DNA from: Macrostomum lignano
Taxonomy: Eukaryota
Reading direction: 5' to 3'
Length of the DNA: 47,736 nt
NCBI GenBank assembly: GCA_002269645.1
Contig: NIVC01004387.1
Location: 1 to 47,736, forward strand
Position 1 is the stretch's first letter; each line of letters begins with the position of its first letter. The notes beneath the pieces are model-generated. The model worked only from the letters and a program-made list of their open reading frames with translations, made no database searches and was not told where the DNA came from. A program made the position numbers and the translations under genes. Of the stretch, positions 4,585-40,604 are shown one piece after another.

Positions 4585-5220
4585 AGGACCTAGAATATGC
4601 CAAAATGGGATTCTTATGGTTCCATATCTCCCTGTATGAGTTGGCAGCCTAAAATATCCCAAAACGGGATTATTATGGTTCCATATCTCCCTGTATAAGT
4701 TGGCAGCCTAAAATATCCCAAAATGGGATTATTATGGTTCCATAACTCCCTGTGTGAGTTGGCAGCCTAAAATATCCCAAAATGGGATCATTATGGTTCC
4801 ATATCTCCCTGTGTGAGTTGGGAGCCTAAAATATCCCAAAATGGGATCATTATGGTTCCATATCTCCCTGTATGAGTTGACAGCCTAAAATATCCCAAAA
4901 TGGGATTATTATGGTTCCATATCTCCCTGTATGAGTTGACAGCCTAAAATATCCCAAAATGGGATTATTATTGTTCCATATCTCCCTGTATGAGTTGACA
5001 GCCTAAAATATCCCAAAATGGGATTATTATGGTTCCATATCTCCCTGTATGAGTTGGCAGCCTAAAATATCCCAAAATGGGATTATTATTGTTCCATATC
5101 TCCCTGTTTGAGTTGACAGCCTAAAAATCCCAAAATGGGATTATTATGGTTCCATATCTCCCTGTTTGAGTTGACAGCCTAAAATATCCCAAAATGGGAT
5201 TATTATGATTTCACATCTCT
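4585..5220. repeat. 59-bp tandem repeat, about 10-11 copies, each with a small hairpin (atccca-aaa-tgggat)
   Basis: The pattern shifts by 1 nt per 60-nt line, giving a period of 59. Confidence 0.95.
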
Positions 5221-6359
5221 CTGAACCCGCGAAGTCGTAGCTACTTATCAACTTATCTGGCACTTATTCAGCATTGTCTTTCTTCCCCCGTTTGTGAGTG
5301 ACTGGAATTGCTCCTTGTCCTTCCTCAGAGACTGTGACTTTGATTTTTGTCTTATATTGTTTCTTTCTAATTATTTTCCGAATAATATTCCTGATCTGCT
5401 CTCGTCCTGAGCTCCATTATCCCAATGGCTATCTGATTATTCGCATGCTTTCTAGTTGAAATTAATTTGATAATTCTTAACGCGATCGCAGCATGTCTTA
5501 TTAAATTTGTGTTTTTACCTTGATTGATGTTCTTCATCGCTTAACTCAAATGGCATATGCACATGTGTACATTGCTGCAACCTTGCTGATAGCGAACTGT
5601 TTAGTAGCAGGATATCAATGAATACACTTGTGTATTGTTGCGGTTTAGAACACTTCTATATAAATCTATTTATAAATAATATCATAATAAATATTCAATA
5701 CTAATGTGGGATAATTATATTGTTATTATGTGTACACACGGACTCGCAGCATTGGCTGGTTTATAACTAACACTGGGAGCTGATTTCAGCTTTCATTTTA
5801 CATGAATTTTTATTGAATTATAGTCAGTGATGAAGATAATGGTATTAGTCCCTAATTGGCACTGTCCCAAAATATATTCTGCTGTAGGTTTCGTCTATTT
5901 AATGATTTTAGTTCAAAATGAAAATACATTATTTATTATAAGTAGCTCGTATACAACTATGCAGTATCTCATCATTAATGATAAGAGTTTATCGCGCAAA
6001 CAGTTTTATATTGCACAAAGTCTGTTTGCTGTTCCAGTGGGCGGGTTGACACACACACACACACACACACACACAGTGCTCACCTGTTTGCATGCACCGG
6101 GTTTTCTTCATTGCGGAATGCGGAGCTCTATAAACTTTTGGCAATTTGCCCTCCAAATCGATATGAAAGCTGCTCATGAACAGTGAGTTGAGCTGTCAGT
6201 TGGCTGTTGGTTAGTGCGCATGCGTCAGCCCATGCAGTGCGTGGGCGGGGCGTCGGCGGATTGAATGGCTGGGCTAAGAGCTCGCATTGAATGTATTATA
6301 CGATACTGATTGCCAACAAAGGAAGTTGTCGCCGCATTTCTTTTTGGCATCCAAAATCA

Positions 6360-7157
6360 AGCCAAGAGACTGAGGGCGCCCATCAAGAGACAGGGGCGCT
6401 AATCAAGAGACAGGGGTACTCACCAAGAAATACGGGCACCCACCAAGAGAAAGGGGGCACCCACCAAAAGAAAGGGGCACCCACCAAGAGAAAGGGGCAC
6501 CCACCAAGAGAAAGGGGACCCACCAATAAACAGGGGCACCCACCAAGAGACAGTTAGCGGCCCACCAAGAGACAGGGGCACCCAACAAGAGACAGTGAGC
6601 GGCCCACCAAGAGACAGGGGCACCCACCAAGAGACAGTTAGCGGCCCACCAAGAGACAGGGGCACCCTAACTGAGACAGTTAGCGGCCCACCAAGAGACA
6701 GGGGCACCCACCAAGAGACAGTTAGCGGCCCACCAAGAGACAGGGGCACCCACTAAGAGACAGTTAGCGGCCCACCAAGAGACAGGGGCACCCACCAAGA
6801 GACAGTTAGCGGCCCACCAAGAGACAGGGGCACCCAACAAGAGACAGTTAGCGGCCCACCAAGAGACGGGCACCCTAACTGAGACAGTTAGCGGCCCACC
6901 AAGAGACAGGGGCACCCACCAAGAGACAGTTAGCGGCCCACCAAGAGACAGGGGCACCCACCAAGAGACAGTTAGCGGCCCACCAAGAGACAGGGGCACC
7001 CACCAAGAGACAGTTAGCGGCCCACCAAGAGACAGGGGCACCCAACAAGAGACAGTTAGCGGCCCACCAAGAGACAGGGGCACCCTAACTGAGACAGTTA
7101 GCGGCCCACCAAGAGACAGGGGCACCCACCAAGAGACAGTTAGCGGCCCACAAGAGA
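6360..7157. repeat. 20-bp monomer array grading into a 42-bp (20+22) dimeric array with core caccaagagaca
   Basis: caccaagagacaggggcacc alternates with caccaagagacagttagcggcc. Confidence 0.95.
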
Positions 7158-7935
7158 CATGTGTACATGTAATTTGAAATAAAAAAATATAGAAATTTTC
7201 TAATTGCTCGTCTGCGGGAAGATTTTCCAAGACAAATTGTAACAAGCCGCAAGTGACTGGCTGCGCAGAATCTCATAAATAGGTCTATTTACATTTCAAT
7301 GCAATTTTTTACCCCTAATTTCCGACAAACAGAACCAAAAACGGAAATGATTTGAGAAAATTAGAGAGAACAGTTGTTAATTCCAGATCCACATGAAAAT
7401 TCTCTTTAATACTATTTTAACACCCTGAGCTTGAGTCCACCTTGGGCCAGGAGTTCAGTTAAAACGTGAGTCAGCCAAGCTTTAAGTTGCACCACGTCTC
7501 CAAAAGTGTTAAAATCCTCACCCAAAACTCTGCACCTGCAGCTTCACATAGCAGCCACTGCATTTGCCGTTCCCATGGAGAAGGAAGGGATTTAGGTATG
7601 GGAAACTAAGTCTGCCAGGTGACGGACAGGCCCAGACGGTCACTAAGGTGGCGTTGGTTGGCTGTTGGCTTTATAGAACTGGATTTTCCATCTATTCAGG
7701 TGCAGAGTGTCACACTATTTCACCCCCCGTCTCTCTCTCGCACCTCTCCTTTATTGGCAAGTCCAAGGAAACTTTAAACCAGTGTCTGGAGTTGACAACT
7801 CTCCATCCCACATAAAATCCTCATTTTCATCCAGCCACTTACATGCAATACGACTAGGCATATTTTAACGTTTTACAATTTTCAACAAAAATGATCATAA
7901 TCCAAATACTAAAAAATGGTAATGATGCTATAGGG

Positions 7936-8478
7936 CAGGGGCCGGTAAACTATTTTCAACTTAAGGGCAGATAGAGAACCTAGCACAGGACTGCGGGTCA
8001 GAGAGAGGAGAGTGGAGAGGAGAGGAGAGAGGAGAGAGAAGTGAAAGTAGGAGAGAACGGGAGAGGAGGGGAGAGAGAGGAGGAGAGAGGGGAAAGAGGA
8101 GGGGAGAAGGGAGAGGAGGGGAGAGAGAAGATAGAGAAGGGGAGAAAGGAGATAGAGAGGAGGGGAGAGAGAAGTGAGGGAGGAGAGAGAGGAGAGGAGA
8201 CGAGTTGGGAGAGGGGAGAGGAGGAGAGAGGGGAAAGAGGAGGGGAGAAGGGAGAGGAGGGGAGAGAGAAGTGAGGGAGGAGAGAGAGGAGAGGAGACGA
8301 GTTGGGAGAGGGGAGAGGAGGAGAGAGGAGATGGGAGATGAGAAAAAAGAGGAGATTAGGGGAAAAAACTCAGAAGAGAAACAAGCCTTTATCGGGCCGA
8401 ATTGCTATTGTGAAGTTTCAAAGGACCCGACAGTGCCGGATAGAGAGGGCTTCATGGGCCGGAGTTTTGCGATTCCTG
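7936..8478. mobile_element. Putative hAT/Charlie-like MITE carrying a GA-rich interior
   Basis: Left end caggggccggtaaact and right end agttttgcgattcctg form an imperfect CAGG-start TIR. The 8-bp flanks ctataggg and ctacagga match at 6/8. The ends resemble recalled MER58-type termini. Confidence 0.5.
8000..8345. repeat. Polypurine GA-rich low-complexity tract with an internal duplication
   Basis: Almost exclusively G/A on the + strand. Confidence 0.9.
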
Positions 8479-8848
8479 CTACAGGAAAACACTGATTTGA
8501 AAGCTTAAAATCTACAAGCTACAGAAGCTACAAATTTTAACAAAATACAGTAGCTAGTATAGCTGTTCTAATTTAGTTTAGAAAACTTAAGTATGACAAG
8601 GTGACGTGTGTGACAAATTGGATACATACTCCAGTTACTCCAGATTTTTGGTCCAGAATCTCTTGTCAAGTCCCAATTTTTTGGGGGGCTGCCTGAGTCA
8701 CTTCAGCACTTCCCACGCCTCCACACACAGCACACAACAGCACAGCAGACGGTTGGGCACAGCAGCTTCAGAACTGACGCTGGCTGGCGGGGGAGGAGCT
8801 AAAAATAGAACACTGCCCCCCCCTGCCCCACCCCCTTCCAACGCCGGC

Positions 8849-8854
8849 TATAAA
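8849..8854 (+). promoter_or_regulatory. TATA box of the secreted-peptide gene
   Basis: TATAAA in a GC-rich context, 130 nt upstream of ATG 8979. Confidence 0.65.
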
Positions 8855-8978
8855 TGCGAGGCCCCGGCGGCGGCCTCCAAGCCCTCCACTTTTCTACGAA
8901 CTCATTCGCAACTGCCAGTCAGACGCAAAAGGCAAAAGAAGACAAAACAACAAAGGAGCAAGAAAGCAGACAGCAGAC

Positions 8979-9272
8979 ATGCAACGATTAAACGGCAGCC
9001 TTCTCATTGCTCTGGTATTCACCATGGCCCTGTGCATCGCCACACTGGACGCTGTGGCCCTGTCTCCATCCGGGGCTCTGCGACTGGAGCTGAACCGCAA
9101 CTCGGCCGCCAGCGAGACCTACTTGATGCGGCAGCGGCCGGATTCCGAGTCCCCAGCGGCAGCACTGCTCAGCCGAAAGCGACGCGGACCTGAGAACGTG
9201 CTCATGCGAGCCTACCAGTGCAACCTGTACCGGAAGCAGGGCAAGAAGCCGCCGCCCAGCCTGAAGTGCTGA
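8979..9272 (+). CDS. Intronless secreted prepropeptide (97 aa): signal peptide, RKRR convertase site, 28-aa C-terminal two-Cys peptide; family unknown
   Basis: Hydrophobic N-terminus (LLIALVFTMALCIATLDA), furin-type RKRR at residues 66-69, mature GPENVLMRAYQCNLYRKQGKKPPPSLKC. GC-rich like the other exons, with a TATA box upstream and AATAAA downstream. Confidence 0.8.
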   Translation: MQRLNGSLLIALVFTMALCIATLDAVALSPSGALRLELNRNSAASETYLMRQRPDSESPAAALLSRKRRGPENVLMRAYQCNLYRKQGKKPPPSLKC

Positions 9273-9714
9273 AGTGTCCTCCGCTCCGGCCGTTACACCA
9301 AATTTGACAGTTTAACTCTTGTGCTGCTCTCGCTAATTAGCGTTGCTATGATGCTGTGATGCTGTACTCTCTACATCATCAATGAATAGTTGAACTCAGC
9401 TAGGAAACTGGCTTTGTAATTGCGCTGGCCAACCAACTCAATTATTCCGCGAAGTTGTCTTTGAAATTTACATTATTTTAAATTTGTGCATGTTTATTCA
9501 GCTTGCTTCACGCGCAAACCAGTCACAACCCACATCTTTACACAGTTCATATGACCTCCAGCTGCTCATACCGCTTGTGCCCTCCTGACCTCAAGTGAGC
9601 TCGGCTCTCAGCTGTTTCTCATTGCTCACTAATTGCTCACAATTGAAAGTCTAAAAAAGTGCCGCCGATTGTATTCAATCGCAAATTTTCTGAGCATTTT
9701 TTGCTTATAAATTG

Positions 9715-9791
9715 AATAAAATAACTGACTGGATCAGAGTTCGATTAAACAAATCCTGCCTTGGATTTTATTTCTTCCGTCAATAAATAAA
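9715..9791 (+). terminator. Candidate polyadenylation signals for the peptide gene
   Basis: AATAAA at 9715-9720 and overlapping copies at 9782-9791. Confidence 0.5.
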
Positions 9792-10102
9792 CGAAAAGTT
9801 CGACGAGCCTGCACTTAAAGCATCGGCAAAATGAGGGCACAAGTGGAAGCAATTGAGCTGTCAGGTGGTATCTCTATGTGCCAGCGCCTATAGGCCCTGG
9901 CCTAGCCATGCTGTGCCAGCGTGCGCACCGCAGACACACAGAGGAGAACAGATAATAAGAAGACAGAGAGGAAGGAGTCACCGACTCTGCCACTTGCTCA
10001 CTGCAAGAGTTTGACTGCACTTAGAACTTTGTTACGGTAGGGGGGGGGGGTCGCCCAGCGCACAAGTTGCCAATGCAGATTGATGGGAATTTTCACGCTC
10101 GC

Positions 10103-10139
<37 letters not shown>

Positions 10140-10402
10140 TTTTAGCTTTCGCATTCCACCTATATAGTCTGGTTGCTCCTGGTTACCAGAGCGCGCCGGC
10201 CGGCATTGAAGTGTTTGTTTGTGGGTGGGGCGAGTAGTTATTTTATAGCAGCACTGCAGACCGAACTGGGAGGGCTGGCGCACAATGCACCCGGCCAGTA
10301 ATAGAGAAGCGATAGGAATGCGGCCACGAACTCCAACGTTTGCCAAGGAGTTCTAGATAAGTACATGTACATCTGGATAGAAAGTTAACTGCTAGCGAAC
10401 TG

Positions 10403-10752
10403 GCACTGATTTTGGCGCTTTGACATCAAACACCTAGCTGGCTTTGGGCACTGATTTTGGCGCTTTGACATCAAACACCTGGCTTTGGGCACTGATTTTG
10501 GCGCTTTGACATCAAACACCTAGCTGGCTTTGGGCACTGATTTTGGCGCTTTGACATCAAACACCTGGCTTTGGGCACTGATTTTGGCGCTTTGACATCA
10601 AACACCTAGCTGGCTTTGGGCACTGATTTTGGCGCTTTGACATCAAACACCTGGCTTTGGGCACTGATTTTGGCGCTTTGACATCAAACACCTGGCCTGG
10701 GCACTGATTTTGGCGCTTTGACATCAGACAACTGGCCTGGGCACTGATTTTG
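10403..10752. repeat. 41/45-bp alternating minisatellite (gcactgattttggcgctttgacatcaaacacct[agct]ggctttgg)
   Basis: Unit starts at 10403, 10448, 10489, 10534, 10575, 10620, 10661, 10701 and 10741. Confidence 0.95.
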
Positions 10753-15953: not shown

Positions 15954-34589
<18,636 letters not shown>

Positions 34590-35167: not shown

Positions 35168-36960
35168 GAGAGAGGAAGGAGAGGGGAGGAGGAAGAGGAG
35201 AGAAGAGGGGAGAAAAAAGTAGAAGAAAAGAGAGGAGAGGAGAGGAGATGAGAGCAGAGCAGATAAGAAAAGATAAGAGGGGATGAGAGGAGATGAGAGG
35301 AGATGAGAGGAGATGAGAGGAGATGACAGGAGATGACAGGGGATGAGAGGAGATGAGAGGAGATGAGAGGAGATGACAGGGGATGAGAGGAGATGAGAGG
35401 AGATGACAGGAGATGACAGGGGATGAGAGGAGATGAGAGGAGATGAGAGGAGATGACAGGGGATGAGAGGAGATGAGAGGAGATGACAGGGGATGAGAGG
35501 AGATGACAGGAGATGACAGGGGATGAGAGGAGATGAGATGAGATGAGAGGAAATAAGAGGAGATGACAGGGGATGAGAGGAGATGACAGGAGATGACAGG
35601 AGATGACAAGAGATGAGAGAAGATGAGAGGAGATGAGAGGAGATAAGGAAAGATAAGATGAGATGAGAGGAGATGAGAGGAGATAAGAGGAGGTGAGAGG
35701 AGATGAGAGAAGATAAGGAAAGATAAGAGGAGATGAGAGGAGATGAGAGGAGATAAGAGGAGGTGAGAGGAGATGAGAGAAGATAAGGAAAGATAAGAGG
35801 AGATGAGAGGAGATGAGAGAAGATAAGGAAAGATAAGAGAAGATAAGAGGAGGTGAGAGGAGATGAGAGGAGATAAGGAAAGATAAGAGAAGATAAGAGG
35901 AGGTGAGAGGAGATGAGAGGAGATAAGAGGAGATGAGAGGAGATGAGAGGAGGTGAGAGGAGATAAGGAAAGATAAGATGAGATGAGAGGAGATGAGAGG
36001 AGATAAGAGGAGGTGAGAGGAGATGAGAGAAGATAAGGAAAGATAAGAGGAGATGAGAGGAGATGAGAGGAGATAAGAGGAGGTGAGAGGAGATGAGAGA
36101 AGATAAGGAAAGATAAGAGGAGATGAGAGGAGATGAGAGAAGATAAGGAAAGATAAGAGAAGATAAGAGGAGGTGAGAGGAGATGAGAGGAGATAAGGAA
36201 AGATAAGAGAAGATAAGAGGAGGTGAGAGGAGATGAGAGGAGATAAGAGGAGATGAGAGGAGATGAGAGGAGGTGAGAGGAGATGAGAGGAGATAAGAGG
36301 AGGTGAGAGGAGATGAGAGGAGATAAGGAAAGATAAGAGGAGATGAGAGGAGATGAGAGGAGATAAGGAAAGATAAGAGAAGATAAGAGGAGGTGAGAGG
36401 AGATGAGAGGAGATAAGGAAAGATAAGAGAAGATAAGAGGAGGGGAGAGGAGATGAGATGAGATAAGAGGAGATGAGAGGAGATGAGAGGAGGTGAGAGG
36501 AGATGAGAGGAGATAAGGAAAGATAAGAGAAGATAAGAGGAGGTGAGAGGAGATGAGAGGAGATAAGAGGAGATGAGAGGAGATGAGAGGAGGTGAGAGG
36601 AGATGAGAGGAGATAAGAGGAGGTGAGAGGAGATGAGAGGAGATAAGGAAAGATAAGAGGAGATGAGAGGAGATGAGAGAAGATAAGGAAAGATAAGAGA
36701 AGATAAGAGGAGGTGAGAGGAGATGAGAGGAGATAAGGAAAGATAAGAGAAGATAAGAGGAGGTGAGAGGAGATGAGAGGAGATAAGAGGAGATGAGAGG
36801 AGATGAGAGGAGGTGAGAGGAGATGAGAGGAGATAAGAGGAGGTGAGAGGAGATGAGAGGAGATAAGGAAAGATAAGAGGAGATGAGAGGAGATGAGAGG
36901 AGATGGTACGAGTTGGAGGGGAGGAAAGAGGGGAGGAAGATGAGGATAGAGGATAGATGA
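35168..36960. repeat. Polypurine 10-mer satellite (gagatgagag, with variants gataaggaaa and gaggtgagag), about 1.8 kb, upstream of Delta
   Basis: Direct periodicity with block duplications. Confidence 0.97.
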
Positions 36961-38012: not shown

Positions 38013-38761
38013 GTATGCCCTTTAGTCAAAGCAAGCTGGCGTCATCCTTAAGATGGACTCTCAATAAAATGCAAATGCCGCACATTATGCCTTTCCATCG
38101 TAGTCATAAAATATTGAACCAAAAACTGGAAATATGAGAATAAATTTATTTCTCAAAGGTGTACTTAACAAAAATCTGTGCCATACAGAATTTGTGTGCC
38201 CCCACACCCAGTTCTTCTCCGACCCGTCAATAAGCCAGCCAAGCCCCCCAATAGCTGAATGGCCGTCTCTACACACGTGAGTAAATAACCGTAAGGATTG
38301 AAAGCTTATCCACCTGCGCCTCAAACGCATTTCAAGCGCGCGACGCGGCACCGGGCTAGGCGAGACTCGTGCGGAGCTGGCACTCGATCCACTTTGCAAC
38401 AATTCGGCTCGTTTAAATCAACACAGCTTCGCCTGCCGCCTGTTTGCTTGACGTCGCCCCTCGTATCCAATAAATTGTCTTACTATAGCTGTTCCTCTCT
38501 CCCCCATTGCGATTGCAGTTTGCTTTTAGGTGCCAGACAGTTATAGATCGAATTTTATGACTATTTACTGACTTATTATATGCTCGGTGAATGCCATTTT
38601 GCGCTGGGGCGTCGTCATAATTATGTTTGGAGAGATTTTATAAGATTTTATAATATTAAGAAATAGTGCTGGCTTGAAAAAGGAATATACAGAGTTCTGG
38701 GTGCTGTCTTGTAGAGACAAGAGGAGACACTGCGGTTTATAGAGGGTGCTATGATCTGTAG

Positions 38762-40600
38762 AGAGCGGATGTCATGGTGTGTAGAGAGAGGGTGTCATGG
38801 TCTGTAGAGAGAGGGTGTCATGGTCTGTAGAGAGAGGGTGTCATGGTGTGTAGAGAGAGGGTGTCATGGTCTGTAGAGAGAGGGTGTCATGGTGTGTAGA
38901 GAGAGGGTGTCATGGTCTGTAGACAGAGGGTGTCAATGGTCTGTAGAGAGAGGGTGTCATGGTCTGTAGACAGAGGGTGTCATGGTCTGTAGAGAGAGGG
39001 TGTCATGGTCTGTAGAGAGAGGGTGTCATGGTGTGTAGAGAGACGGTGTCATGGTGTGTAGAGAGACGGTGTCATGGTGTGTAGAGAGAGGGTGTCATGG
39101 TCTGTAGAGAGAGGGTGTCATGGTCTGTAGAGAGAGGGTGTCATGGTGTGTAGAGAGACGGTGTCATGGTGTGTAGAGAGACGGTGTCATGGTCTGTAGA
39201 GAGAGGGTGTCATGGTCTGTAGAGAGAGGGTGTCATGGTGTGTAGAGAGAGGGTGTCATGGTCTGTAGAGAGAGGGTGTCATGGTCTGTAGAGAGAGGGT
39301 GTCATGGTGTGTAGAGAGAGGGTGTCATGGTCTGTAGAGAGAGGGTGTCATGGTGTGTAGAGAGAGGGTGTCATGGTCTGTAGAGAGAGGGTGTCATGGT
39401 GTGTAGAGAGAGGGTGTCATGGTCTGTAGACAGAGGGTGTCAATGGTCTGTAGAGAGAGGGTGTCATGGTCTGTAGACAGAGGGTGTCATGGTCTGTAGA
39501 GAGAGGGTGTCATGGTCTGTAGACAGAGGGTGTCATGGTCTGTAGAGAGAGGGTGTCATGGTGTGTAGAGAGAGGGTGTCATGGTCTGTAGACAGAGGGT
39601 GTCAATGGTCTGTAGAGAGAGGGTGTCATGGTCTGTAGACAGAGGGTGTCATGGTCTGTAGAGAGAGGGTGTCATGGTCTGTAGAGAGAGGGTGTCATGG
39701 TCTGTAGAGAGAGGGTGTCATGGTGTGTAGAGAGAGGGTGTCATGGTCTGTAGAGAGAGGGTGTCATGGTGTGTAGAGAGAGGGTGTCATGGTCTGTAGA
39801 GAGAGGGTGTCATGGTGTGTAGAGAGAGGGTGTCATGGTCTGTAGACAGAGGGTGTCAATGGTCTGTAGAGAGAGGGTGTCATGGTCTGTAGACAGAGGG
39901 TGTCATGGTCTGTAGAGAGAGGGTGTCAATGGTCTGTAGAGAGAGGGTGTCATGGTCTGTAGACAGAGGGTGTCATGGTCTGTAGAGAGAGGGTGTCATG
40001 GTCTGTAGAGAGAGGGTGTCATGGTGTGTAGAGAGACGGTGTCATGGTGTGTAGAGAGACGGTGTCATGGTCTGTAGAGAGAGGGTGTCATGGTCTGTAG
40101 AGAGAGGGTGTCATGGTGTGTAGAGAGAGGGTGTCATGGTCTGTAGACAGAGGGTGTCAATGGTCTGTAGAGAGAGGGTGTCATGGTCTGTAGACAGAGG
40201 GTGTCATGGTCTGTAGAGAGAGGGTGTCATGGTCTGTAGAGAGAGGGTGTCATGGTCTGTAGAGAGAGGGTGTCATGGTGTGTAGAGAGAGGGTGTCATG
40301 GTCTGTAGAGAGAGGGTGTCATGGTGTGTAGAGAGAGGGTGTCATGGTCTGTAGAGAGAGGGTGTCATGGTGTGTAGAGAGAGGGTGTCATGGTCTGTAG
40401 ACAGAGGGTGTCAATGGTCTGTAGAGAGAGGGTGTCATGGTCTGTAGACAGAGGGTGTCATGGTGTGTAGACAGAGGGTGTCATGGTGTGTAGAGAGAGG
40501 GTGTCATGGTCTGTAGAGAGAGGGTGTCATGGTGTGTAGAGAGAGGGTGTCATGGTGTGTAGAGAGAGGGTGTCATGGTCTGTAGACAGAGGGTGTCAAT
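38762..40600. repeat. 23-bp satellite (tggtctgtagagagagggtgtca), about 80 copies
   Basis: Direct periodicity. Confidence 0.97.
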
Positions 40601-40604
40601 GGTC

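What the first reader, a model, noticed from the sequence alone, without database searches (positions are those of the whole stretch)
8849..9791. Orphan secreted hormone- or pheromone-like precursor: 28-aa peptide with a 17-residue C-terminal disulfide ring
Seen: a complete small gene (TATAAA 8849, ATG 8979, stop 9272, AATAAA 9715/9782). It encodes a signal peptide, a spacer, RKRR, then GPENVLMRAYQCNLYRKQGKKPPPSLKC. The only two mature cysteines enclose a 17-residue ring (C-x15-C) and the peptide ends on Cys. Established: natriuretic peptides have a 17-residue ring, CNP ends on the ring Cys and is furin-processed, and somatostatin-28 and Drosophila sex peptide also end in a Cys ring. This peptide lacks the natriuretic FG..DRI core and is strongly cationic with a PPP motif, so I recognise no family. 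Inference: an undescribed signalling peptide (possibly a receptor guanylyl cyclase or GPCR ligand), a seminal-fluid peptide, or an antimicrobial peptide. This is the best candidate in the window for a new system.
Basis: partly seen in the sequence, partly recalled or inferred. Interest (0 to 1): 0.85.

Follow-up and report, generated by a model that had tools for sequence, protein, structure and literature searches.

The report
Orphan flatworm secreted propeptide gene
This is a real, already annotated but uncharacterised small gene of the flatworm Macrostomum lignano that looks like the precursor of a secreted 28-residue disulfide-looped peptide; it has no detectable relatives, its function is untested, and such orphan genes are common in this genome.

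Summary
ORF 8979-9272 (+) encodes the 97-aa protein as read: signal peptide, spacer, RKRR, then a 28-mer with a C-x15-C ring ending on Cys. The window is contig NIVC01004387.1 of Macrostomum lignano (Mlig_3_7). The gene is already annotated from RNA-seq as hypothetical protein BOX15_Mlig013743, with a single exon. Its annotated 5' end lies 35-37 nt downstream of TATAAA.

Coding is supported in three ways. GC3 is 0.77, the same as real exons nearby, while the UTRs are 0.40-0.45. The ATG is the first in the transcript. The diverged subgenome copy differs only by three synonymous codon changes, including CGA>AGG, which keeps the first Arg of RKRR.

No relative was found in Pfam, 5.8 billion proteins, 1.84 billion HMMER representatives, PDB or metagenomes. 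The natriuretic signature is absent.

Function stays inferred. Most likely it is a convertase-processed, extracellular, disulfide-looped peptide, either a signalling peptide or a gland product. An amphipathic antimicrobial helix is not supported. I found no expression site and could not search congeners. Non-conserved genes are very common in this species, so interest is modest.

The parts
8849..8854 (+). TATA box (TATAAA)
   Evidence: Read directly. It lies 35-37 nt upstream of the 5' end of the RNA-seq-derived gene model, and it is conserved in the roughly 95%-identical copy L001. There are 18 TATAAA on the + strand of the window.
8886..8978 (+). 5' UTR (annotated model begins at 8886; the true start is probably a few nt upstream)
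   Evidence: The GenBank model for this contig is a single block, 8886-9272, called 'partial' only because the UTR is open in frame (P0002). There is no ATG in 8880-8978. The start context is ACAGCAGACATGC, with a purine at -3. This is the most diverged part between copies, at 11 differences in 130 nt.
8979..9272 (+). CDS, single exon, 97 aa plus stop
   Evidence: GC1/2/3 is 0.62/0.50/0.77, like the real exons nearby. It differs from L001 at 4 nt in 3 codons, all synonymous.
8979..9059 (+). Signal peptide, residues 1-27 (MQR / LNGSLLIALVFTMALCIATL / DAVA)
   Evidence: Rule-based call. The n-region carries Arg3. The hydrophobic core has a Kyte-Doolittle mean of 2.6 over 15 residues starting at residue 9. 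Small residues sit at -3 and -1 (Ala25, Ala27), giving AVA|LS; the alternative is CIA|TL after Ala21. AF2 predicts a helix over 4-28. SignalP was not available.
9060..9173 (+). Pro-region (spacer), residues 28-65
   Evidence: AF2 pLDDT is below 50 for most of residues 36-69, so it is predicted disordered. pI is 6.3 and net charge about 0. There is no Pfam domain.
9174..9185 (+). RKRR tetrabasic site (R-X-K/R-R, furin / proprotein-convertase consensus), residues 66-69
   Evidence: Read directly. Codon 66 is CGA in the window and AGG in L001, so two nucleotide changes keep Arg. Cleavage itself is inferred.
9186..9269 (+). Predicted mature 28-mer GPENVLMRAYQCNLYRKQGKKPPPSLKC; Cys81 (9219-9221) and Cys97 (9267-9269) enclose a 17-residue ring
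   Evidence: Net charge is about +5, pI 9.8, and mass 3219.8 Da reduced. AF2 predicts a helix over residues 72-86 with pLDDT 72-90, followed by a coil containing PPP. It is identical in all three genomic copies. The disulfide is inferred.
9273..9791 (+). Putative 3' UTR with AATAAA at 9715-9720 and at 9782-9787 / 9786-9791
   Evidence: Read directly. GC is 0.40. It has 10 differences in 519 nt against L001. The actual poly(A) site could not be checked with these tools.

Best explanation
A lineage-restricted (orphan), TATA-driven, intronless gene of Macrostomum lignano encodes a 97-residue secretory pre-propeptide.

Inferred pathway:
1. The N-terminal signal peptide directs the protein into the ER and is removed, most likely after Ala27.
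2. The two remaining cysteines (Cys81, Cys97) oxidise to a disulfide.
3. A furin or proprotein convertase cuts after RKRR69. This releases a disordered 38-residue propiece and the C-terminal 28-mer GPENVLMRAYQCNLYRKQGKKPPPSLKC.
4. The peptide needs no carboxypeptidase trimming or amidation, because it ends at the stop codon.

The product would be a short helix (residues 72-86) tied by the disulfide to a Pro-rich, Lys-rich tail. It would be strongly cationic and act outside the cell. The most likely role is an intercellular signal (neuropeptide, hormone or pheromone-like ligand), by analogy with other precursors that carry one cyclic peptide at the extreme C-terminus behind a basic site.

Shown: the gene, its transcript-based annotation, the coding signature and the motifs.
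Inferred: secretion, cleavage, the disulfide and any signalling role.

My rough sub-confidences are: real coding gene 0.85; secreted 0.8; cleaved at RKRR 0.65; signalling ligand rather than gland or defence product 0.35. The overall confidence of 0.4 is for the whole statement, including the preference for a signalling role.
For: - The ORF and motifs are present.
- Three subgenome copies are annotated from RNA-seq-only evidence (PMC5730564).
- The model's 5' end lies 35-37 nt after TATAAA in both diverged copies.
- It uses the first ATG of the transcript, with a purine at -3.
- GC3 is 0.77, equal to the neighbouring bona fide exons, against 0.40-0.45 in the UTRs.
- There are 0 non-synonymous and 3 synonymous codon differences against the ~95% copy. 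The chance that all are synonymous is about 0.005-0.02. One of them is CGA>AGG at the first Arg of RKRR.
- The N-terminus has the tripartite signal-peptide features, and there is no other hydrophobic segment.
- AF2 gives a signal helix, a disordered pro-region and a confident helix in the mature part.
- RX[KR]R with both Cys downstream and a terminal Cys occurs in 0.3% of composition-matched shuffles.
- A PC2 homologue is used as a pan-neuronal marker in M. lignano, so the processing machinery exists (PMC12435804).
Against: - No expression site is known. The gene ID was absent from every supplement that could be searched.
- There is no homologue anywhere, so the Cys spacing and cleavage site have not been tested by evolution.
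- Local divergence between copies is low everywhere (0-5 differences per 100 nt over 8300-10100). The within-genome selection test is therefore weak (genome-wide SNP rate 2.2% overall and 1.1% in CDS).
- A tetrabasic furin-type site is as typical of constitutively secreted gland products as of neuropeptides.
- There is no amidation signal and no repeated peptide copies.
- SignalP and ProP could not be run.
Confidence: 0.4

Rival explanations
1. It is an exocrine secretory product rather than an internal signal. The peptide would be made in gland cells (prostate/seminal fluid, cement, rhabdite, pharyngeal or adhesive glands) and released to the outside or into the mating partner. It would act as a seminal-fluid, mucus-associated or defence (antimicrobial) peptide.
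For: - It has the same secretory architecture.
- TATA-box, non-conserved genes are typical of tissue-specific secreted products.
- A furin-type RKRR suits the constitutive pathway.
- The peptide is cationic (+5, pI 9.8) with a C-terminal disulfide loop, as in Rana-box or thanatin-like peptides (my own knowledge).
- Many prostate-limited, fast-evolving secreted transcripts are described in this species (abstracts of PMC5977470 and PMC7336406).
Against: - The predicted helix is not amphipathic. Its hydrophobic moment is 0.15, below the shuffle mean of 0.26.
- The pro-region is neutral, not anionic.
- There is no BRICHOS or other antimicrobial-precursor domain.
- There is no real similarity to thanatin, brevinin or arenicin beyond a KKP/PPPS stretch.
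- The ID is not in the seminal-fluid-protein screen supplements that are held, but those files are small and use other ID schemes, so this is weak.
Confidence: 0.3
2. It is a transcribed but functionally unimportant young ORF. In this reading the locus is a recently arisen or decaying gene, and the signal-peptide-like and RKRR features are fortuitous.
For: - There is no homologue in any database.
- Orphan genes are very numerous in M. lignano.
- The between-copy comparison has only 4 substitutions, so purifying selection is not firmly shown.
- The window is full of repeat-derived ORFs.
Against: - The codon-position GC profile is indistinguishable from conserved genes in the same window.
- The ORF is not in a tandem repeat; the arrays flank it at 8019-8331 and 10402-10752.
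- All three codon differences are synonymous, including a two-step Arg-to-Arg change.
- It uses the first ATG, with a well-placed TATA box.
- The joint motif arrangement is rare in shuffles, at 0.3%.
Confidence: 0.12
3. It is a highly divergent member of the natriuretic-peptide (CNP-like) family that signals through a receptor guanylyl cyclase.
For: The ring has 17 residues, the peptide ends on the ring Cys, and a basic processing site lies upstream, as in CNP (knowledge of CNP is my own).
Against: - There is no Pfam hit of any kind at E up to 10, including the natriuretic peptide model.
- The signature C-F-G-x3-[DEA]-[RH]-I-x3-S-x2-G-C is matched only at the two Cys.
- The local alignment score against CNP-22 is below the shuffle mean (z = -1.2), and ANP gives z = 1.7.
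- Natriuretic peptides are not established in protostomes (my own knowledge).
Confidence: 0.02

Closest known systems
C-type natriuretic peptide (CNP) precursor
   Same: Small precursor with a signal peptide, a pro-region and basic processing. There is a single bioactive peptide at the extreme C-terminus, a 17-residue disulfide ring (C-x15-C), and the peptide ends on the ring Cys.
   Different: None of the conserved ring residues (CFG...DRI...SGLGC) is present, apart from the two ring-closing Cys. There is no Pfam or HMMER match, and the pairwise score is below random. The ring here is Lys- and Pro-rich. The family is not established in protostomes.
Somatostatin-28 / cortistatin, allatostatin-C, urotensin II and MCH-type precursors
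   Same: They share the layout of signal peptide, spacer, basic site and a non-amidated cyclic peptide at or near the C-terminus. Somatostatin-28 is also 28 residues long and ends on Cys.
   Different: Ring sizes differ: C-x10-C, C-x6-C, C-x4-C and C-x8-C, against C-x15-C here. There is no FWKT-type core, no Pfam hit, and pairwise z-scores are near 0.
Drosophila sex peptide / DUP99B (seminal-fluid peptides)
   Same: A short secreted peptide with a C-terminal disulfide loop that ends on Cys. These are lineage-restricted and fast evolving.
   Different: There is no sequence similarity (z = 1.0) and no Pfam hit. Sex peptide is released by signal-peptide cleavage alone, has a Trp-rich N-terminus, and has a C-x11-C loop. 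There is no evidence that this gene is expressed in male accessory tissue.
Exendin-4 C-terminus / Trp-cage miniprotein (structural analogy only)
   Same: An alpha-helix is followed by Gly and a PPPS segment. The candidate has NLY...G..PPPS, and the remembered Trp-cage sequence is [20 protein letters not shown]. This suggests a helix/polyproline fold-back, here stapled by a disulfide.
   Different: The match is only the RPPPS/KPPPS pentapeptide (z = 3.0 with 13 comparisons made, so not significant). There is no Trp and no glucagon-family N-terminal part. The analogy rests on a single-sequence AF2 model and on remembered sequences.
Cationic loop antimicrobial peptides (Rana-box brevinins, thanatin, arenicin)
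   Same: Net positive charge, and a disulfide loop at the C-terminus.
   Different: The loops are much smaller (brevinin, thanatin) or form a beta-hairpin (arenicin). The candidate's helix is not amphipathic, its propiece is not acidic, and there is no BRICHOS domain.

Membership tests
Natriuretic peptides (Pfam ANP family / PROSITE signature) | 17-residue disulfide ring (C-x15-C) | tested here: met
   The ring CNLYRKQGKKPPPSLKC is 17 residues long.
Natriuretic peptides (Pfam ANP family / PROSITE signature) | Conserved ring signature C-F-G-x3-[DEA]-[RH]-I-x3-S-x2-G-C (signature recalled from memory) | tested here: not met
   The regular expression does not match. Only the two Cys coincide.
Natriuretic peptides (Pfam ANP family / PROSITE signature) | Match to the family profile HMM | tested here: not met
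   hmmscan against all of Pfam-A returned 0 families at E up to 10.
Natriuretic peptides (Pfam ANP family / PROSITE signature) | Activates a receptor guanylyl cyclase | not testable with these tools
   This needs a cGMP assay with synthetic peptide.
Somatostatin / allatostatin-C type peptides | Profile match, and the characteristic ring (C-x10-C with FWKT, or C-x6-C) | tested here: not met
   There is no Pfam hit. The ring is C-x15-C. Alignment z-scores are -0.1 and 0.0.
Drosophila sex peptide family | Profile match or sequence similarity | tested here: not met
   There is no Pfam hit. The alignment z-score is 1.0.
Convertase-processed secretory peptide precursors (prohormone-type; a functional class, not a homology family) | N-terminal cleavable signal peptide | tested here: met
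   Rule-based only. Arg3 in the n-region, a 16-residue hydrophobic core with Kyte-Doolittle mean 2.6, AVA at -3/-1, and no second hydrophobic segment. AF2 predicts a helix over 4-28. SignalP was not available.
Convertase-processed secretory peptide precursors (prohormone-type; a functional class, not a homology family) | Basic cleavage site flanking the peptide | tested here: met
   RKRR at residues 66-69 fits R-X-K/R-R. Arg66 is kept through CGA>AGG in the diverged copy.
Convertase-processed secretory peptide precursors (prohormone-type; a functional class, not a homology family) | Mature peptide detected, and expression in neurons or endocrine cells with PC2 | not testable with these tools
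   No peptidomics or expression table containing Mlig013743 could be found. A single-nucleus atlas exists but uses Mlig_4_5 IDs.
Convertase-processed secretory peptide precursors (prohormone-type; a functional class, not a homology family) | Conservation of the peptide, cleavage site and Cys spacing in related species | not testable with these tools
   Only the three M. lignano subgenome copies were reachable, and they are identical at protein level. No other Macrostomum sequence is in the searchable collections.
Cationic antimicrobial peptides (helical / Rana-box / BRICHOS-derived) | Net cationic mature peptide | tested here: met
   Charge is +4.7 at pH 7 and pI is 9.8.
Cationic antimicrobial peptides (helical / Rana-box / BRICHOS-derived) | Amphipathic structure, an anionic propiece or a BRICHOS domain | tested here: not met
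   The hydrophobic moment of ENVLMRAYQCNLYRKQ is 0.15, and 78% of shuffles are at least as high. The propiece has charge -0.2. There is no Pfam domain.

The most novel reading that the evidence does not exclude
The 28-mer is the founding member of a Macrostomum- or flatworm-specific class of disulfide-stapled helix/polyproline peptide hormones or pheromones. It would be made from a one-peptide precursor and act on a dedicated receptor (a GPCR or receptor guanylyl cyclase). It would have converged on the CNP/somatostatin precursor layout and on a Trp-cage-like fold.
Probability: 0.15. Interest if true: 0.55.

Novelty: new member of a known kind. Interest (0 to 1): 0.3.

Why it matters
If the peptide is made and acts as a signal, it would add a lineage-specific ligand to the flatworm peptide repertoire. 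M. lignano has transgenesis, RNAi and a single-nucleus atlas, so the promoter, knock-down, peptide and receptor could all be tested directly. It would also be another case of convergence on the layout 'one cyclic peptide at the C-terminus behind a basic site'.

The present evidence only establishes an uncharacterised secretory-type orphan gene, one of very many in this genome. It opens no long-standing question and contradicts nothing.

Tried and rejected
1. Homology searches all came back empty.
   - Pfam at E up to 10 gave nothing.
   - The 5.8-billion-protein word-indexed search found only the gene itself.
   - The full HMMER scan of 1.84 billion representatives found only itself plus P0003. 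P0003 is a 650-aa translation of a tandem repeat whose score comes from three summed stretches, and BLASTP finds no alignment to it. I rejected it as spurious.
   - PDB sequence search found only an 8-residue match to a designed repeat protein.
   - Foldseek of the AF2 model against PDB gave 0 hits.
   - The JGI metagenome scan gave 304 pattern hits, none confirmed.
   - Rfam on 8000-10500 gave nothing above noise.

2. Paralogues. tblastn of the precursor and the 32-mer against the window, L001 and L002 found only the gene itself.

3. Transcript look-up by exact protein. The 97-aa form is not on record, and the annotated forms occur only in the NCBI genome assembly.

4. Expression. 'Mlig013743' is absent from the full text of the library. 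It is also absent from the held supplements of PMC5730564, PMC5816591, PMC5946080, PMC7336406, PMC12896417 and PMC5977470. PMC10786194 has no held supplements. Many of these files are truncated or use other ID schemes, so the absence says little.

5. Rate-based selection test. I rejected it as uninformative, because the whole 8300-10100 interval is only 0-5% diverged between copies.

6. Amphipathic-helix antimicrobial reading. I rejected it on the hydrophobic moment.

7. Gene-family expansion. I rejected this reading of the three copies, because they are the three subgenome copies expected for about 85% of this assembly.
Full report
**Identity of the window.** The 47,736-base window is the whole contig NIVC01004387.1 of the Macrostomum lignano assembly Mlig_3_7 (GCA_002269645.1).

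**The observation.** Every coordinate checks out.
- TATAAA is at 8849-8854.
- The ATG is at 8979 and the TGA at 9270-9272.
- AATAAA is at 9715-9720, and at 9782-9787 overlapping 9786-9791.

The ORF gives the 97-residue protein MQRLNGSLLIALVFTMALCIATLDAVALSPSGALRLELNRNSAASETYLMRQRPDSESPAAALLSRKRRGPENVLMRAYQCNLYRKQGKKPPPSLKC. RKRR is residues 66-69. The C-terminal 28-mer holds exactly two cysteines, Cys81 and Cys97. They are separated by 15 residues, and the last one is the final residue. A third cysteine, Cys19, lies in the signal peptide.

**Is it a gene?** It is already annotated.
- GenBank carries it as 'hypothetical protein BOX15_Mlig013743g1, partial' (PAA64917.1). That entry is the copy on NIVC01001700.1.
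- The window's own model is a single block, 8886-9272.
- 'Partial' only reflects that the 5' UTR is open in frame.
- The Mlig_3_7 GenBank annotation was built exclusively from RNA-seq and transcriptome assemblies, followed by TransDecoder (PMC5730564). The model therefore implies a transcript.

Its 5' end lies 35-37 nt downstream of the TATAAA. That spacing holds in the diverged copy as well. TATAAA occurs only 18 times on this strand in 47.7 kb.

Several further features point to coding.
- The 5' UTR contains no ATG, and position -3 is a purine.
- GC by codon position is 0.62/0.50/0.77. Two real exons of the Delta-like gene in the same window give 0.63/0.49/0.78 and 0.50/0.52/0.77. The UTRs are 0.45 and 0.40.
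- The ORF sits between tandem-repeat arrays (8019-8331 and 10402-10752), not inside one. This matters because the window's other long ORFs are repeat artefacts.

**Copies and selection.** The assembly holds three copies, all in the same gene neighbourhood: a 1456-aa gene upstream and a Delta-like gene downstream on the opposite strand.
- The window and L002 (NIVC01000995.1) are 99.7% identical, and identical across the gene.
- L001 is about 95% identical overall.
- Three copies is the norm for about 85% of this neopolyploid assembly. The mean SNP rate is 2.2% genome-wide and 1.1% in CDS (PMC10733133). This is therefore not a family expansion.

Between the window and L001 the CDS differs at 4 of 294 nt in three codons, all synonymous.
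- Cys19: TGC>TGT.
- Pro30: CCA>CCG.
- Arg66: CGA>AGG. Two changes preserve the first Arg of RKRR.

With 77 synonymous and 214 non-synonymous sites, the chance that all are synonymous is about 0.005-0.02. This favours purifying selection but is thin. The whole 8300-10100 interval is only 0-5% diverged, so the low rate by itself proves nothing.

**Anatomy of the product.**
- *Signal peptide.* The N-terminus has the classical three parts: a basic n-region (Arg3); a 16-residue hydrophobic core with Kyte-Doolittle mean 2.6; and a c-region with small residues at -3 and -1 (AVA27|LS, or alternatively CIA21|TL). There is no second hydrophobic segment.
- *Predicted structure.* A single-sequence AlphaFold2 model has mean pLDDT 65. 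It shows a helix at 4-28, pLDDT below 50 for most of residues 36-69 in the pro-region, and a confident helix at 72-86 (block pLDDT 72-90). The Gly/Lys/Pro-rich tail follows.
- *Charge.* The pro-region is neutral (pI 6.3). The 28-mer is cationic, at about +5 with pI 9.8, and weighs 3219.8 Da reduced.
- *Cleavage sites.* RKRR fits the furin/convertase consensus R-X-K/R-R. The internal RK and KK-Pro pairs are poor convertase sites (general knowledge), so an intact ring is the likely product.
- *Helix character.* The helix is not amphipathic. Its hydrophobic moment is 0.15, below the shuffle mean of 0.26.
- *Motif rarity.* In composition-matched shuffles of the post-signal part, RX[KR]R with both Cys downstream and a terminal Cys occurs in 0.3%.

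**Relatives.** None were found.
- Pfam gives no family at E up to 10.
- The 5.8-billion-protein search and the exhaustive HMMER scan of 1.84 billion representatives return only the gene itself. One additional hit is a tandem-repeat artefact that BLASTP does not align.
- PDB sequences, Foldseek against PDB, JGI metagenomes and Rfam add nothing.
- There is no paralogue in the window or the two other loci.
- I made direct comparisons with remembered sequences of CNP-22, ANP, somatostatin-28, sex peptide, MCH, urotensin II, allatostatin-C, elevenin, arenicin, thanatin, brevinin, exendin-4 and the Trp-cage. They give nothing beyond KKP/PPPS low-complexity matches. The natriuretic signature matches only at the two Cys.

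The searchable collections hold no Macrostomum data other than the annotated M. lignano proteome. The key test, conservation in congeners, could therefore not be run.

**Mechanism.** The best-supported reading is a secretory pre-propeptide. The steps are signal-peptide removal, Cys81-Cys97 oxidation, and convertase cleavage after Arg69. This releases a 28-residue, disulfide-looped, cationic peptide that needs no further trimming. A PC2 homologue is a pan-neuronal marker in this species (PMC12435804), so the machinery exists.

All of these steps are inferred from motifs. What the peptide does is open.
- The one-cyclic-peptide-at-the-C-terminus layout is that of CNP, somatostatin, urotensin II, MCH and allatostatin-C precursors. 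This favours a signalling ligand.
- The TATA promoter, the furin-type site, orphan status and positive charge fit an exocrine gland or seminal-fluid product equally well.
- An amphipathic-helix antimicrobial peptide is not supported.
- A functionless young ORF is unlikely given the codon signature, but it is not excluded.

**A structural curiosity.** The mature part reads helix-Gly-x-x-PPPS, with NLY in the helix. This recalls the helix/polyproline fold-back of exendin-4 and the Trp-cage, here possibly stapled by the disulfide. This is an analogy from memory and a single-sequence model, not a finding.

**Expression.** I could not locate any. The ID is absent from the searchable full texts and from the held supplements of six M. 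lignano transcriptomic papers; a seventh, PMC10786194, has no held supplements. A single-nucleus atlas exists but uses a different assembly's IDs.

**Verdict.** The gene is already in GenBank as a hypothetical protein. Non-conserved genes (lacking homology to human) make up 42.9% of the non-trans-spliced genes of this species (PMC8629364). It is therefore a reasonable candidate for a new peptide ligand or gland peptide, but not a surprising object. I rate it a new member of a known kind, with interest about 0.3.

Noticed in passing
window 14814 to beyond 29275, minus strand: This is a Delta/Serrate-type Notch ligand gene (757-aa product with MNNL, DSL and EGF domains). Its introns are packed with minisatellite arrays that create long spurious ORFs. 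The EGF/transmembrane exon lies around 16000-16750, and the DSL-coding exon around 28106-28400.
   Followed up: partly
window 1 to about 3330, plus strand: By alignment with L002 (offset 1112), the start of the contig corresponds to the 3' part of a 1456-aa gene with no Pfam domain. That gene is annotated in the two other copies but not in this contig, presumably because the contig end truncates it.
   Followed up: no
whole window, e.g. 812-1352, 4589-5223, 6362-7159, 21150-22618, 27018-27873, 35230-36905, 38741-40604: The density of tandem repeats is very high, with about 25 distinct arrays of periods from 4 to 141 nt. They account for nearly all ORFs of 150 aa or more in the six-frame list, and they produce strong local GC and AT skews.
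   Followed up: partly
window vs L001 (NIVC01001700.1) and L002 (NIVC01000995.1): The window and L002 are 99.7% identical over about 10.7 kb, while L001 is about 95% identical with many indels in repeat arrays. So two of the three 'subgenome' copies here are nearly identical and one is clearly older. The published analysis reports unimodal divergence among the three paralogues.
   Followed up: partly
P0003 (database protein, not in the window): This 650-aa 'protein' is a translated tandem repeat. It reached E = 2e-4 against the query in the exhaustive HMMER scan by summing three weak stretches. It is a reminder that repeat translations can produce false orphan 'relatives'.
   Followed up: yes
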